Positions 35,601-56,600 of a DNA stretch of 64,000 nt are shown here, one piece after another (the first letter of the stretch is position 1; each line of letters starts with the position of its first letter). The DNA is from Octopus sinensis (taxonomy: Eukaryota). The stretch spans positions 86,242,001-86,306,000 of the forward strand of contig NC_043001.1 of the NCBI RefSeq assembly GCF_006345805.1, read 5' to 3'. The translations under genes were made by a program, and so were the position numbers. The notes under the pieces were generated by a model that was not told where the DNA came from, ran no database searches, and was given only the letters and a program-made list of their open reading frames with translations.

Positions 35601-38600
35601 CATTTCGGAGTAGTTATCACCTCTTCGGTCACAGGCACTGGCAATGCGCAACAGGCTGATCGCATCACGGGAAAATCTAACATTGTTTCAGATCCAACTG
35701 GTTCCCTTGAGAGTTTGATAAACCAGTATGATTGTCGGGTTGATCCTTTAAATCAGAGATAAAGAAACGACCCACACAGTGAATCCCTTCTTACCTGCTC
35801 ACCTGCAGGGAAGGTGTTAGCCTCAATTTGTTGGGATGCAAAAGGTATTATGTTTAAGGACTATCTTCAAAAGTGCTACCTCATGAATGGAAAGAACTAT
35901 ACCAAATTGCCGATGCAGTTACTAAAGTCTATCAAGAACATACGCCCAGCAAAACTGATGGAAGGTGTCTTTTTCACAAGGACAATACTCCAGCACATAA
36001 ATATTCGGTTTCAATGGCTGCTGTGCGTGATTTTGGCTTTGAACTGGTTGATCAGCTTCCATATTTTCCTGATTTGGCTCCTCAGACTATCATCTGTACC
36101 CCCACCCCAACATGAAAAAACGCTTGGCTGCGAACTTCTATCGCGGTGAGGATGACGTTGTATCTACTGTTAATGACATTTTTGATTAATATAGGACAAA
36201 ATATTCTTCACCAACGGGATCCGAGCATTACAATATCGATGGAAGAAGTGTATGGATCGCAAGGGGGACTATGTTAAAAATAAAATTCATTTGGCCACAT
36301 TCCATGAGAGTATCTATGTTACCCTATGAATTTTTCAGCCAACTGTCTTGTATAATCCCTCTTCCTCCTTTACTTGCTACCAAGTCTAGTATGAACTTTC
36401 ACCCAACACTTCTTATGTTAACTTCCTCTGCATCTATCTTTCTCTCTCTTTCTCTCTCTCTCTCTCTCTCTCTCTCGATATCTATCTATCTGTCTATTTA
36501 CCTATCTGTAGATGCTGTGACTAGAAAAATCATCCAGCCGACTATTCCAACAACATTTATTTTGGTTATTATTATATAAAGATTCTCAGAAAAACAAGTG
36601 GCAAAGTTGGACATCATAAGAATAAATATGAATGAGAATAAGTAATGTCACATTTTATCTAGTAAGTACTCTACACCTTTAGATGGCTTCACAATTCTTA
36701 AAGCTAATACGTTGCCATCTAAAATGTACAAGTGATGAAGACTTAAGAAATGTAATGCAGGTGACAGAAAGTTTAAATTACATCAGTTATTTTCTCGTAT
36801 TATTTTGTTTTTTAATATTTCTGCTCTAACACTTGGGCGACAAGCTGACATAACGTTAGCGCGCCGGGTAATACACTTAACAACATTTTGTTCGTCCTTA
36901 AATTCGCCGAGGTTGACTTTGCCTTTCATTCTCCAGAAGTTGACCCACTTCTGTGAAATTGCTGGCTTTGTGACGAAATTTGAAATGAATATTTCTGTTG
37001 TACTAAAAATTAATATTTTATTTTTTACAGTATAATTTCGTAACTCCATTAACATCAATGGTCGTCACCAAATCCCGAGTTAAAGAGGAACTTTTTGAAG
37101 AAGGTAATTTCATCCTTCATACCATTTTAATCTACTTTCATGGACGTCTTGTTGAAAAGAATTTACCATAATGCCTAAATTCATCCATTATTGTTATAAT
37201 TTACAGCTAGGTATCAAACATTCAGATCTGCACGGTTAATCTGCAAAATTTAGCATTACTACTTCAGATTAATCATACAGATCATACTAAATTTTCTATA
37301 TTGAAAGATCTGGTTTCACAGGAAGTCTTGAATGGTTTATTCTAGCAAATCGTGATCGGATTCTTGAGTTGTGGTTTTGCATTGTATATAGTGATCCGGG
37401 TTCGATTACTAAACATTCTTGCTAAAAATATAATTAAAGTGTACGTGTTATAGTATAGAGCAATGACTAATTACGTAATTTATTCCGACAATTTTTATAT
37501 ATATTGGTTGTATTTCAGACTGATCCAGCAAGCAATTTCTGTCTAATTACGGCCTTAGTATTTATCATGCTCTTTACCCAAAATAAGGAAGAAACTGTTA
37601 TATTTAGGAAATTGTTTAAAAAATCATAAAACTGCTTTCTCTAAAATTGATACCTCTGCTGGTATATTTTTTTCTTCTTAAATTCTGTTATTTTATACTA
37701 TAAATGCTATTTTGAGACCATTTTTTCAAATTTTCAATGTATTTCTCTTCTATTGTAGAAGAAGATGTATCACCTTCAAGTAAGTATATCTCATACTACG
37801 TAAGTATATTCAAATTTGAATTGTTTCAAACAGCAATACGATATGATTTCTTTCTTTCACAAACCACTTCAAGTCGTCTATAAAACAAATTATTTTATTT
37901 TAACTTTGTAGCTGGGAATTTTGCTTGTGTTTCTCTTTTTTTTTTTCGAGTTGTAATAGTAATGCAAATTTGAGGAAGCTTCATACCAGTTCTTACAGGG
38001 TAGTACTATAGGAAGTCCAACTGACTCCAGTGTATTATTGAAACTTATTTTGTTGAGCCAGTGAAGACTTTATTTTTCTTAATATATACTTGCAACTAGT
38101 TAACAGAGAAAAAACATGTTTCATCCAAATTTACATTTTGTTTTTATTTCTTTGTACAGGCAGACCCCATGGCGCATATCTTCGTGAGTAGAAATACTTC
38201 GTTAATTTACTCTTCTGTATTTAGCATCACAAATATCTGAACACATTTTCTTCACTAATGTAAATTTCTAAATTCAAATTAAAATGCATAAAATAACAAA
38301 ATAAAATTGAATCGCTTAAACGAAAACATTACATTATATTATGTCTTTTGGTAATGTTTGCTCTGTTTTACTTGTTATCCAAATTTCAAATTACATTCTG
38401 TATTCATATTGGCATAACTTTGAGGCCTTCAGGATTTTTTCTCGAAAAGAATTTTGATTTGATCAATTTCTAATACAGTATTACCACGCAGTACGAGTTT
38501 AGTCCCATCCATGTCCGAGCTCATTTTACGATTTACTCGTTTTACAAATCAATGTTCCCAATTGAAATCAATTAGAATATAATTAATTCGTTCCAGCCCC

Positions 38601-53600: not shown

Positions 53601-56600
53601 AGCTAGATAGATAAAAGGAAAGAAAGAAAGCTAGATAGATAGATAACTAGTAATACTACTACGTACAGTGGTAGATTAATATACTTGGTGAAAGAACACC
53701 TAAGGTCAGGCTGGAACAGCATCACATTCATTAGTTTTAGTCAATAAATACGTCACTCGCATTATAAAGTTTAGTATTATTTCTATCGAATTCGAAGGAC
53801 CTATTATAATTTCATTATTATTTTTTTGTCTCTCTTTTTCAGACGGTCTACCTCCTTTAGGTATGTAACATGTTTCATCCAAATTTACATTTTGTTTTTA
53901 TTTCTTTGTACAGGCACTTATCCTATAGGTATGTAACACTCTCCTACATTAAGCCAACATCCATTAACAGAAAATTAAATCACATTCTTAGCATAAACAG
54001 TAGTCTTTCGGTTTAAAACGTAGATTGGTTTCACGAATAATTGCGCAAGTCAAAAAGTTTGAAATGGAAGGATATGTGTTTAAAAATATTATATATTTAA
54101 AAAATAAATAATAAAACATACAAACTATAGTTTCGCTGTTTTATCGAATGTTTTCTTGGTTTTGAAGTTGATTTGGTATTTTCATTCGGTTTAATAATTG
54201 AACCTCTGTTTTTGAATATTCAAAATATTTAACGAAATATATGAAAATTAATCTTACCTAAGACTTACTTAAATGAAACCAAATTCCTACTAACATGAAA
54301 CCGTGCAAATGGAGTGTCGTATAAACCAGGATACAGTTTCATTATGATATTATCAGTATAATATTGAGATAACAGTTCAAGTTATTATGCAGTATCTGTG
54401 GTTCTACATGTATACTCTAGTTTCTACAGACCTCAGAACGAGACCCGATCTTTAGGCATCTTTATATCGAAGGCATCATCAAGATCTAAGAGTTTAATAT
54501 GAGTAAAACATGTCTTTTCTTGGTGTGGGGGGAGCACAAGAATTTGCATGTGTAGATTACCTTCACTACGAATACATCAAGTGATACGCACACACACACA
54601 CACACGCATATAAATACATACACATATATATATATATATATATATATATATATATATATATATATATATATATATATATATGGATAATTCGGTTAACCGA
54701 TACCTGGGTAGCAAATTCACGTCAGAAAAACACGGTTGAAGCTACATGCCAAGGGCAGAGATCACGTGCTTTCGTGTGGAAAATTGTGTGTTTTTTAATA
54801 CAAATAAATAAAAGAATGGAGTTGAACGACGATTTAACAAAATTCCTTTATTCTCGACATATGTTTCGAAGGCTGCATATTCCTAATTTCGAAGGAATAA
54901 GGCGTGCATTATGCCGTCTTAGTCTCGGAGGTAAACCCTAGCAGATTAAAGTTCTTATCCAGCAATTCCAAAATTAGAAATTCCATTTACCAGTGTCAAA
55001 TTTCTTCTGGTACCGATGTCTTCTTCTACATTGGGGCAACTACTTCTAAGTTATCCCAGAGGATCTCCAATCATTATTCAACTTTCTGAGATAAGAGAAA
55101 ACAACAAAGCACAGGACTAAGTAGATTAGTTTGGCGTCTTAAGGACAGCAATACAACTTTCAAGCTGGAATGGTCCATATTGTCTGTATCCTTTCCGTTT
55201 GATAAGGGCAGAAAATTTTGTGGCGTCTGTAACTCCGAACTTTTCCATATATTGTTCGCCAAATTCCCTTTAATAAACACAATGGTTGAAAAATCATATA
55301 GGTGCATGCACTGGCAGAAACACACCTTTCACTCATATGAATGATGATTAATATAGATAACCTCCTTGAATTTTAATAATTTGGTTCCATTTATACATCA
55401 CCCCCATAGACAAATTCTTATACTCATAAAGGACAACTACCAAATTCGTTGAGGTATGTTTTACCTTTGTCTCTCTGCCTCGCCCTCCTCTCTCTCTCTC
55501 TTTCAGTAGAATAACACCTAACAAGAGGAGACACTCTTGTATAAAGAGAGGTTACATAACATGAAGCTAATAAGTTTAAACGAAGTCATTGCTATTGCTG
55601 TTATAAGGCAGAGGAAGTACGTTTAGCAATAATAACGAAGTCTAGTTTCAAGGATATTTCATTTTCAGTAGTTATATGTCCTTTCTAGGAAACATCATTG
55701 GACATTCAAAATAACTGTTGTTTAGAAGTTTATTTTGTTTTGATGTTTTATTTTTGTTTTCTTGAAATGTATACAGTTTAACAATGTTAAGTCTATCATA
55801 GCTGCTCTGTTCAAAACATGCTTTAATCCCCAAATAAAGTTTTCCGTTCAATTTCCGTAATGAGTAAGATTTAAATTGTTATATTGCTTTAAATTCAAAT
55901 TGAACTATATTGTTTCAGGAATGACATACATACCCCCTGCCACATTTACAATGACAACCAGACGACCATATACACGGGGACCACCAGGAACAACAACAAC
56001 AAGAGTACCAAGTTTTCAACACAGCCCTGGTAAGAAAATATGAACATCGTTCTATTTATCAAAGTGTAATATATTTGCTGAATTTTGAAGATATCAATCC
56101 TCCAAAGTAATAAGAAATATCAAACTAATACACTTTAAAAAGTATATATTTTATAAATTTTCAGTAGCTTTCATAATGCTGCCCGGCGGCGTCCGATGGG
56201 GTGTACTGTCAAATGGTACGTCATTGTTTTGCAGTGCTTTATCATATGTTCGTCGATTTTTGTGATGGCTGAAACGTACAAACAGCGTGCATCCGTGAAA
56301 TTCTGTTTTCTGCTATGGAAAACGGCGGCCATGCTTCAAACAGTTTACAAGGATGCTGCAATGAGTAAAGCACAAATTTACTAGTTCCCACTTTTTAGGA
56401 ATGGTCACTTGTCGCTTGAAGACCTATCTCGTTCAGGATGACCGCTGACCTCCCGAGCGACTGAAAATTCATACACTGATCTTGGACCAACGTCACCGGA
56501 CAATTGATGAATTTGTTGGCATGATTTGTGTGTCCTGGAGCTCCTGTCAACAAATTCTGAGCGAGTAATTGCGAATGAAATGAGTTGCAGCAAAATTTAT

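What the first reader, a model, noticed from the sequence alone, without database searches (positions are those of the whole stretch)
37759..56029. Array of symmetric micro-exons encoding a modular Pro/Gly-rich linker in an ITIH-like protein
Seen: between the [10 protein letters not shown] exon (ends phase 1) and the C-terminal-domain exon (starts phase 1) lie exons of 21, 24, 18, 24, 30, 30, 18, 15 and 111 nt, then a second set of 18, 24, 30, 18, 15 and 111 nt. All are multiples of 3, phase 1-1 and stop-free, with AG/GT sites. Joined, the first set reads [70 protein letters not shown]... Any subset keeps frame, and the junction codon changes with the partner exon (e.g. G vs R). Established: schistosome micro-exon genes diversify secreted proteins this way, and vertebrate ITIH4 has a variable proline-rich region at this position. 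Inference: a combinatorial, length-polymorphic linker in a secreted haemolymph or matrix protein. Gene predictors would probably miss these exons.
Basis: partly seen in the sequence, partly recalled or inferred. Interest (0 to 1): 0.88.

Follow-up and report, generated by a model that had tools for sequence, protein, structure and literature searches.

The report
Micro-exon linker of octopus ITIH-like gene
An expressed octopus relative of the inter-alpha-trypsin-inhibitor heavy chains builds its flexible middle linker from a string of tiny in-frame exons that multiplied by tandem duplication and evolve far faster than the introns around them, but the same design is already annotated in neighbouring genes and the "second set" is only a near-identical copy.

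Summary
All listed exons exist, are multiples of 3, are phase 1-1, have AG/GT borders, and join into the quoted peptide.

The window is Octopus sinensis chromosome DNA. It carries an ITIH4-like gene (VIT + VWA with MIDAS) for which I found no model of its own.

Assembled RNA contigs from three studies show m21-m24a-m18a, then m24b in two runs, and a GT..AG joint from the 111-nt exon to the C-terminal exon. So the micro-exons are real coding exons.

- The 15-30-nt exons lie in a ~1.9-kb tandem repeat; O. bimaculoides has one unit. Two 18-nt copies have lost their donor.
- The "second set" is a 99.9% identical 8.2-kb duplicate that cuts the next exon. The mRNA contigs hold only one set's worth.
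- Combinatorial use in this gene is only hinted at: m24b is present in organism B and apparently absent in A.

RefSeq isoforms of O. bimaculoides paralogs do differ by 4-11-residue linker cassettes with changed junction codons, so the design is already in public models.

New here: micro-exons are 40% diverged from the ortholog versus 7% for introns (p = 1e-9).

The scan found the same architecture three times before in other paralogs of this genome, two near this window and one 2.3 Mb away.

The parts
2553..37103 (+). Exons 1-8 of the ITIH4-like gene: 2553-2630, 16081-16238, 18223-18333, 18429-18679, 19974-20137, 28703-28991, 30145-30833, 37031-37103. They encode signal peptide, VIT, VWA with MIDAS, and the [12 protein letters not shown] motif. 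The 604-codon ORF is intact and ends in phase 1.
   Evidence: tblastn mapping; splice-site reconstruction with canonical GT/AG; Pfam VIT and VWA
37759..37779 (+). m21 micro-exon (..EDVSPS.)
   Evidence: ag/gtaagt. Its 3' end joined to m24a appears in the X13 RNA contig. The O. bimaculoides orthologue is 27 nt and is used in model P0155.
38160..38183 (+). m24a micro-exon (.RPHGAYL.), first unit of the tandem repeat
   Evidence: RNA contigs of X12, X13 and X17 carry its sequence joined to m18a (table 7). The orthologous 24-nt exon is in P0155.
38113..45707 (.). Tandem array of ~1.87-1.9-kb units, each holding a short intron, a 15-30-nt exon, a long repeat-rich intron and an 18-nt exon. There are 4 full units at 94-96% identity.
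   Evidence: self-BLAST; unit alignment; a single unit in O. bimaculoides L001
39993..40010 (+). m18a micro-exon (.GLPPS.)
   Evidence: Aligned in the X13 main contig, with m24a letters directly before it. Present in the X12 and X17 loose ends.
40064..40087 (+). m24b micro-exon (.GTQGSYI.) with a weak donor (gttaat)
   Evidence: Follows m18a in the X12 and X17 contigs. Apparently absent from the X13 main contig, judged by depth arithmetic. The 17-nt deletion is seen.
41837..41854 (+). Dead 18-nt exon copy: donor is ct, not gt. A second such copy is at 43706-43723.
   Evidence: direct reading
41908..41937 (+). m30a micro-exon (.GPHGQSSNF.)
   Evidence: ag/gtgagt.
43777..43806 (+). m30b micro-exon (.GPQGQSSNF.), 1 nt different from m30a
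   Evidence: No direct RNA evidence. Contig lengths (at most 70-88 nt between m24b and m111) do not leave room for both m30 exons plus m18b and m15 in organism B.
45635..45652 (+). m18b micro-exon (.GLPPL.)
   Evidence: An X13 contig over this place carries G>C at 45653, which breaks the donor, so the exon is polymorphic (table 3).
45706..45720 (+). m15 micro-exon (.TYPI.)
   Evidence: In all three RNA runs the exon before m111 ends in AG but not CAG, which fits m15 or m18b.
47707..47817 (+). m111 exon (MTYIPPATF...SFQHSP)
   Evidence: Covered at depth 291-908 in three RNA runs. A GT..AG joint from 47817 to the ct1 acceptor is present in RNA and absent in DNA (tables 5 and 8).
49585..49645 (+). 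Truncated copy of the first 61 nt of ct1. It ends at the duplication junction 49645/49646 (2-nt microhomology TG).
   Evidence: The X1 DNA contig ends exactly at 49645 (table 8, record 4).
49646..57857 (+). 8.2-kb tandem duplicate of 39568-49645 minus one 1.87-kb unit. It carries the 'second set' of exons (50063-50080, 50134-50157, 51978-52007, 53843-53860, 53914-53928, 55919-56029).
   Evidence: Only 4 substitutions (one of them at the junction itself) and 6 small indels over ~8.2 kb. No m111-to-m18a' joint in RNA contigs.
57797..57901 (+). ct1, the first C-terminal exon (.[34 protein letters not shown].)
   Evidence: tblastn. The X17 RNA contig runs on past 49645 with CAGAAACCAAAC, which is the sequence at 57858 onward (table 7).
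61011..62523 (+). ct2 (61011-61276) and ct3 (62390-62523 including the stop). ct2 lacks one G at its first base compared with the paralogue, so in the assembly the frame stops two codons after ct1.

Best explanation
Window 37759-56029 is the linker-coding part of an expressed Octopus sinensis ITIH4-like gene, one member of a tandem paralogue cluster.

Shown:
- Between the conserved [12 protein letters not shown] exon and the Cys-containing C-terminal exon, the protein is encoded by symmetric phase-1 exons of 15-30 nt plus one of 111 nt.
- At least m21, m24a, m18a, m24b and m111 are spliced into mRNA as predicted.
- The array grew by tandem duplication of a ~1.9-kb unit of exon plus intron. The sister species has one unit; this genome has four.
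- An 8.2-kb block was then copied again. That copy adds nothing detectable to the mRNA contigs.
- Exon bodies diverge about six times faster than the flanking introns.

Inferred:
- Because every exon is phase 1-1, unit gain or loss by unequal crossing-over and exon skipping both keep the reading frame. This makes the linker easy to lengthen, shorten and re-sequence.
- The linker sits at the position of the protease-susceptible region of vertebrate ITIH4, and the VWA keeps a canonical MIDAS. It is therefore most likely a disordered, cleavable hinge or bait under diversifying selection in a secreted protein.
For: - Gene identity: Pfam VIT and VWA; intact 604-codon ORF with DxSxS, T and D MIDAS residues.
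- Splicing: loose ends in X13 (..CTTCAA|m24a|m18a) and in X12 and X17 (m24a|m18a|m24b); joint 47817 to 49585 with GT..AG in three RNA runs and not in DNA.
- Tandem units. One unit in O. bimaculoides.
- Duplicate block.
- Exon versus intron divergence from the orthologue: 18/45 versus 105/1518 mismatches, Fisher p = 1.1e-9. Among units: 24/138 versus 82/2661.
- All three substitutions in m111 between the two organism labels fall on first or second codon positions (table 3; frame).
- Family context: micro-exon linkers in Argonauta P0007 and O. sinensis P0151; cassette isoforms in O. bimaculoides.
- Position equals the ITIH4 proline-rich region. ITIH4 bait mechanism: PMC7793589.
Against: - Those exons were outside the laid stretch or too short to be laid.
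- The RNA runs are labelled RNA only by guess. The spliced joints, absent from the DNA run, argue that they are RNA.
- Alternative splicing within one individual is not shown.
- In the assembly a 1-nt deletion at ct2 truncates the protein after ct1. The O. bimaculoides orthologue model is also truncated. This paralogue could therefore be decaying.
- The C-terminal part matches no Pfam family.
- The bait function is by analogy only.
- Fast exon divergence could partly reflect exon replacement by gene conversion from paralogues.
Confidence: 0.72

Rival explanations
1. The 'second set' (49646-57857) is an assembly artefact: two haplotypes of one locus, with 4 and 3 repeat units, stacked in tandem. 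The real gene would then have a single set.
For: - The copies differ by 4 substitutions (one at the junction itself), microsatellite lengths and one whole unit, which is the pattern expected of alleles.
- At both substitution sites covered by the laid stretch (46326, 49379), short-read contigs of X1 and X13 show only the copy-B letter (table 3).
- The mRNA contigs hold only one set's worth of exons.
Against: - The junction has no overlap homology, only 2 nt.
- It falls inside an exon.
- The independent short-read contig of X1 stops exactly at 49645, as expected at a real branch point (record 4).
Confidence: 0.3
2. The linker is merely a passive, unconstrained spacer. Its micro-exons multiply and drift without any selected role for the variation.
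For: - The sequence is low in complexity and rich in Pro, Gly and Ser.
- Length and module content differ freely among paralogues and species.
- There are dead 18-nt copies.
Against: - Neutral drift cannot make exons about six times more diverged than adjacent introns.
- Frame, phase and splice sites are kept in all used exons.
- The 40 nt of intron upstream of each exon are identical in all units and in the sister species.
Confidence: 0.2
3. This paralogue is a transcribed pseudogene in decay, so its micro-exon array has no present function.
For: - A 1-nt deletion at ct2 gives a stop two codons after ct1.
- The O. bimaculoides orthologue model ends by reading through the m24 donor, and no m111 or ct1 was found within 8 kb downstream.
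- No own gene model was found.
Against: - The spliced contigs are the deepest on the laid stretch outside the repeat-derived bins (depth 291-908). Contig depth is a poor measure of expression.
- The ORF is intact through more than 700 codons with canonical splice sites.
- Another paralogue (P0153, three RefSeq isoforms) also ends two codons after ct1, so a short form may be normal.
- The missing G may be an assembly error.
Confidence: 0.12

Closest known systems
Octopod ITIH4-like paralogues with annotated micro-exon linkers: O. bimaculoides XP_014784808-12 and XP_052823894-96, O. sinensis P0151, Argonauta hians P0007
   Same: - Same domain order and the same [10 protein letters not shown]...KPLNC boundaries.
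- The linker is encoded by 15-39-nt exons duplicated in tandem with their introns.
- Isoforms differ by 4-11-residue cassettes with changed junction residues.
   Different: - The linker sequence is unrelated beyond the first two exons.
- This paralogue has its own ~1.9-kb unit array, an extra 8.2-kb duplicate that cuts ct1, and no model of its own in the collections searched.
Vertebrate ITIH4 proline-rich / protease-susceptible region (PMC7793589)
   Same: - Same position directly after the conserved NFVTPLT.MVV motif.
- Pro/Gly-rich.
- The VWA has a canonical MIDAS.
- No DPHF bikunin-linking consensus.
   Different: - No sequence similarity in the linker.
- The C-terminal part does not match Pfam ITI_HC_C.
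- Cleavage and protease trapping are untested.
- I did not examine whether the vertebrate region is built from micro-exons.
Schistosoma micro-exon genes (MEGs; PMC10526429)
   Same: Short symmetric exons separated by long introns, secreted products, variation by exon skipping, and rapid evolution.
   Different: - In MEGs nearly the whole coding sequence is micro-exons, and the proteins are small.
- Here micro-exons make up only the linker (about 60 codons from the eight 15-30-nt exons, about 100 with m111) of a protein whose predicted full length is about 870 residues, with large folded domains.
- There is no homology.

Membership tests
[quoted passage not shown] | N-terminal VIT domain | tested here: met
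   PF08487, E = 1.4e-6, on window:18122-18334
[quoted passage not shown] | VWA domain with MIDAS residues | tested here: met
   PF00092 on two exons. DVSGS, GATN and LTDG are read in the reconstructed ORF.
[quoted passage not shown] | C-terminal ITI_HC_C domain (PF06668) | tested here: not met
   No Pfam hit at E <= 1 for window ct2 or ct3, or for the C-termini of P0151, P0002 and P0007. Bivalve relatives do carry PF06668.
ITIH1-3 type (bikunin-linked) | DPHF cleavage and chondroitin-linking consensus after the linker | tested here: not met
   Not present in the linker and ct1 or in the ct2 and ct3 frames. Present in the oyster relative P0164.
ITIH4-type bait inhibitor | Variable Pro-rich, protease-susceptible region directly after the FVTPLT.MVV motif | tested here: met
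   The position matches rodent ITIH4 P0240 and P0219. Composition is seen.
ITIH4-type bait inhibitor | Cleavage in the region followed by MIDAS-dependent trapping of the protease | not testable with these tools
   Needs biochemistry. The mechanism is taken from PMC7793589.
Schistosome-type micro-exon genes | Symmetric exons (multiples of 3, same phase) flanked by long introns | tested here: met
   All nine exons are phase 1-1. Introns are 53 nt to 2 kb.
Schistosome-type micro-exon genes | Most of the coding sequence is made of micro-exons | tested here: not met
   The eight 15-30-nt exons give only about 60 codons of a roughly 870-codon predicted full-length ORF.
Schistosome-type micro-exon genes | Combinatorial exon skipping in transcripts | tested here: inconclusive
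   This gene: m24b is in the X12 and X17 contigs but apparently not in the X13 main contig. Paralogues: RefSeq isoforms differ by cassettes.

The most novel reading that the evidence does not exclude
The octopus ITIH4-like cluster is a MEG-like diversification system grafted onto a bait-and-trap protease inhibitor. Phase-1 micro-exons are duplicated, rapidly re-sequenced under positive selection and combinatorially spliced. Each gene, allele and isoform would then offer a different cleavable bait to pathogen or endogenous proteases. That would be an innate-immune repertoire generator in a cephalopod.
Probability: 0.25. Interest if true: 0.75.

Novelty: new member of a known kind. Interest (0 to 1): 0.45.

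Why it matters
- It shows directly that tiny symmetric exons, together with their introns, serve as the unit of growth of a protein linker in a cephalopod.
- It gives a clean signal of exon-specific accelerated evolution: 40% divergence in the micro-exons against 7% in the introns.
- If the linker is a protease bait like that of human ITIH4, the octopus cluster would be a natural experiment in diversifying a bait region.
- Practically, it flags an expressed paralogue for which I found no model of its own. A RefSeq model borrows its first two exons.
- It also flags a probable structural variant and a 1-nt problem in the assembly.

Tried and rejected
- The search for homologous proteins, three searches: no full-length or fragmentary protein of this gene was found. 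The last search, aimed at RNA-contig fragments, gave nothing.
- The look-up of encoding contigs for P0002 found no record.
- TRF cannot see the 1.9-kb period because its longest period is 500. Self-BLAST was used instead.
- Pfam on the C-terminal exons gave nothing.
- Read laying could be run once on 6 kb. Their inclusion therefore rests on contig-length arithmetic, assuming that '255' in the tables is a cap.
- DNA depth could not settle the copy number of the 8.2-kb block, because the laid stretch held no single-copy control.
- I rejected the idea that the two sets double the linker: there is no m111-to-m18a' joint, and at most 70-88 nt lie between m24b and m111.
- The first sequencing-run run failed on length and was re-sent.
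Full report
**What the sequence shows**

The window is AT-rich, repeat-rich animal DNA. On the + strand it carries a gene with a VIT domain and a VWA domain (Pfam).

Mapping of octopus ITIH4-like proteins and a splice-site reconstruction give eight canonical exons from 2553 to 37103. They hold an intact 604-codon frame that ends in phase 1. 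This frame includes a signal-peptide-like start, the MIDAS residues (DVSGS, T, D) and the conserved [12 protein letters not shown] motif.

The window is G000:C5:86242001-86306000. The length of C5 (135,913,566) equals that of the contig carrying O. sinensis RefSeq proteins. The genome is therefore Octopus sinensis.

All listed exons are there with AG/GT borders:
- m21 37759-37779
- m24a 38160-38183
- m18a 39993-40010
- m24b 40064-40087
- m30a 41908-41937
- m30b 43777-43806
- m18b 45635-45652
- m15 45706-45720
- m111 47707-47817
- a second series from 50063 to 56029
- then ct1 57797-57901

All are multiples of 3 and phase 1-1. Joined, they give exactly the quoted peptide.

No exon ends in T, so no junction codon can be a stop.

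1. The 15-30-nt exons lie in a tandem array of ~1.87-1.9-kb units at 94-96% identity. Each unit has a 53-nt intron, a variable exon, a long repeat-filled intron and an 18-nt exon.
2. Two 18-nt copies (41837-41854, 43706-43723) have ct instead of gt and are dead.
3. m24b lost its gtgagt donor through a 17-nt deletion and uses gttaat.
4. The 'second set' is not independent. Segment 49646-57857 is a copy of 39568-49645 minus one unit. It differs by 4 substitutions, one of them at the junction itself, plus a few microsatellite indels.
5. The duplication junction cuts ct1 after 61 nt (partial copy 49585-49645). It has only 2 nt of microhomology, and its right side is a dispersed repeat.

**RNA evidence**

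One 5,991-nt stretch (45610-51600) was laid with Logan contigs of three runs guessed to be RNA (X12, X17 = organism B; X13 = organism A) and one DNA run (X1, organism A). X13 and X1 match the window at m111, while organism B has three substitutions there.

- All three RNA runs carry a GT..AG joint from 47817 to 49585 (m111 to ct1) at depth 291-908. The DNA run does not.
- X17 runs on past 49645 with CAGAAACCAAAC, which is the true ct1 continuation.
- In X13, the letters directly before 50063 (m18a) are ..CTTCAA + m24a.
- In X12 and X17, the letters before 50131 are the end of m24a plus m18a, and m24b then aligns.

So m21-m24a-m18a is confirmed in organism A and m24a-m18a-m24b in organism B.

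Three points are inferred rather than seen:
- In X13 the deep contig covers only 19 nt here (m18a plus G). By depth arithmetic, m24b seems to be skipped in organism A.
- In all runs the m111 piece starts two letters early (AG, not CAG). The preceding exon therefore ends in TAG, which fits m15 or m18b.
- If '255' is a table cap, at most 70 nt (X17) or 88 nt (X12) lie between m24b and m111. That leaves room for m30+m18b+m15 (63 nt) but not for two sets.

No joint from m111 to the second set was listed.

**Is the 8.2-kb duplicate real?**

For:
- The X1 short-read contig of 979 nt ends exactly at 49645, as expected at a graph branch (record 4).
- The junction shows no overlap homology.

Against:
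- The copies differ in the way alleles differ.
- Copy A's private letters at 46326 and 49379 are not seen in X1 or X13.

I put about 0.7 on a real, possibly heterozygous, duplication.

**Comparison with relatives**

*O. bimaculoides orthologue (L001).*
- It is collinear at about 89% identity but has one repeat unit.
- Its orthologue of m21 is 27 nt and its orthologue of m24a is 24 nt. Both are used in model P0155, which then reads through the donor.
- Exon bodies are far more diverged than introns: 18 of 45 aligned positions plus a 6-nt indel, against 105 of 1,518 (Fisher p = 1.1e-9). e8 is 97% identical.
- The same contrast holds among the window's own units: 24/138 against 82/2661, though these pairs are not independent.
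- The 40 nt upstream of each exon are identical in all units and in the sister species.
- The three A/B substitutions in m111 fall on first or second codon positions.

*Family context.*
- In Argonauta hians, the P0007 linker maps to about 12 exons of 15-39 nt, with a 3.5-kb tandem copy of a three-exon unit.
- In O. sinensis, the P0151 linker maps to 15-24-nt exons.
- O. bimaculoides RefSeq isoforms X1-X5 of one paralogue and X1-X3 of another differ only in the linker. The differences are cassettes of 4, 5, 6, 10 and 11 residues with altered junction residues.
- The design and its alternative use are therefore already in public gene models. I found no paper describing it.
- Earlier notes of this scan report the same design in three other paralogues of this genome, two near this window and one 2.3 Mb away.

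*This gene's own model.* I found none. RefSeq P0151 uses its exons 1-2 at 100% identity and continues in downstream paralogues.

**Mechanism**

Shown: symmetric phase-1 micro-exons are spliced into the linker, the array grew by unit duplication, and exon sequence turns over fast.

Inferred:
- Unequal crossing-over between the near-identical introns changes unit number (1, 3 and 4 units are seen). Skipping keeps the reading frame.
- The linker sits exactly where rodent ITIH4 has its Pro-rich region.
- Human ITIH4 is cut in that region and then traps the protease through its VWA MIDAS (PMC7793589).
- The likeliest role is therefore a disordered, cleavable hinge or bait under diversifying selection.

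The C-terminal part matches no Pfam family, and there is no DPHF motif. The protein is ITIH4-like rather than ITIH1-3-like.

**Caveat**

In the assembly, ct2 lacks one G at its first base compared with the paralogue. This puts a stop two codons after ct1. It is either a real short form (paralogue P0153 ends the same way) or a 1-nt assembly error.

**Verdict**

This is a new, apparently unannotated member of an already annotated but undescribed kind. The added results are the exon-specific acceleration and the structural history of the array.

Noticed in passing
window 61003-61011: The ct2 acceptor reads ttctacag|T, whereas the paralogue at G000:C5:~86481620 reads ttctacag|GT. The missing G shifts the frame, giving TAA two codons after ct1. 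This is either a real truncation or a 1-nt assembly error.
   Followed up: partly
window 2553-2630 and 16081-16238: RefSeq O. sinensis protein P0151 (1136 aa, two VIT domains) matches these two exons at 100% but takes all later exons from downstream paralogues. It appears to be a chimeric gene model.
   Followed up: partly
window 45653: An X13 contig over 45621-45852 has C instead of G at the first base of the m18b donor, the same defect as in the dead copies. m18b therefore looks polymorphic.
   Followed up: no
window 49646-49720 and the start of each repeat unit: This stretch belongs to a dispersed repeat with dozens of 88-95% copies on many chromosomes. The left breakpoint of the 8.2-kb duplication lies in it.
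   Followed up: no
window 40934-41206 (- strand) and the same place in every unit: A 91-codon open frame on the minus strand is repeated in each 1.9-kb unit ([13 protein letters not shown]...). It may be a transposon remnant.
   Followed up: no
window 22196-24560 (- strand) and 35457-36146 (+): Long open frames that look like retrotransposon and transposase remnants lie inside introns of the ITIH-like gene.
   Followed up: no
window 2565-2627 (exon 1): The O. vulgaris ink proteome paper PMC10142993 lists the peptide [21 protein letters not shown], which is identical to this gene's predicted N-terminus. It also lists a linker/ct1 peptide of paralogue P0156.
   Followed up: partly
L001:33026-43026 (O. 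bimaculoides): Downstream of the single repeat unit, the orthologous locus shows no match to m111, ct1, ct2 or ct3 within 8 kb. The orthologue may have lost or displaced its 3' part.
   Followed up: partly
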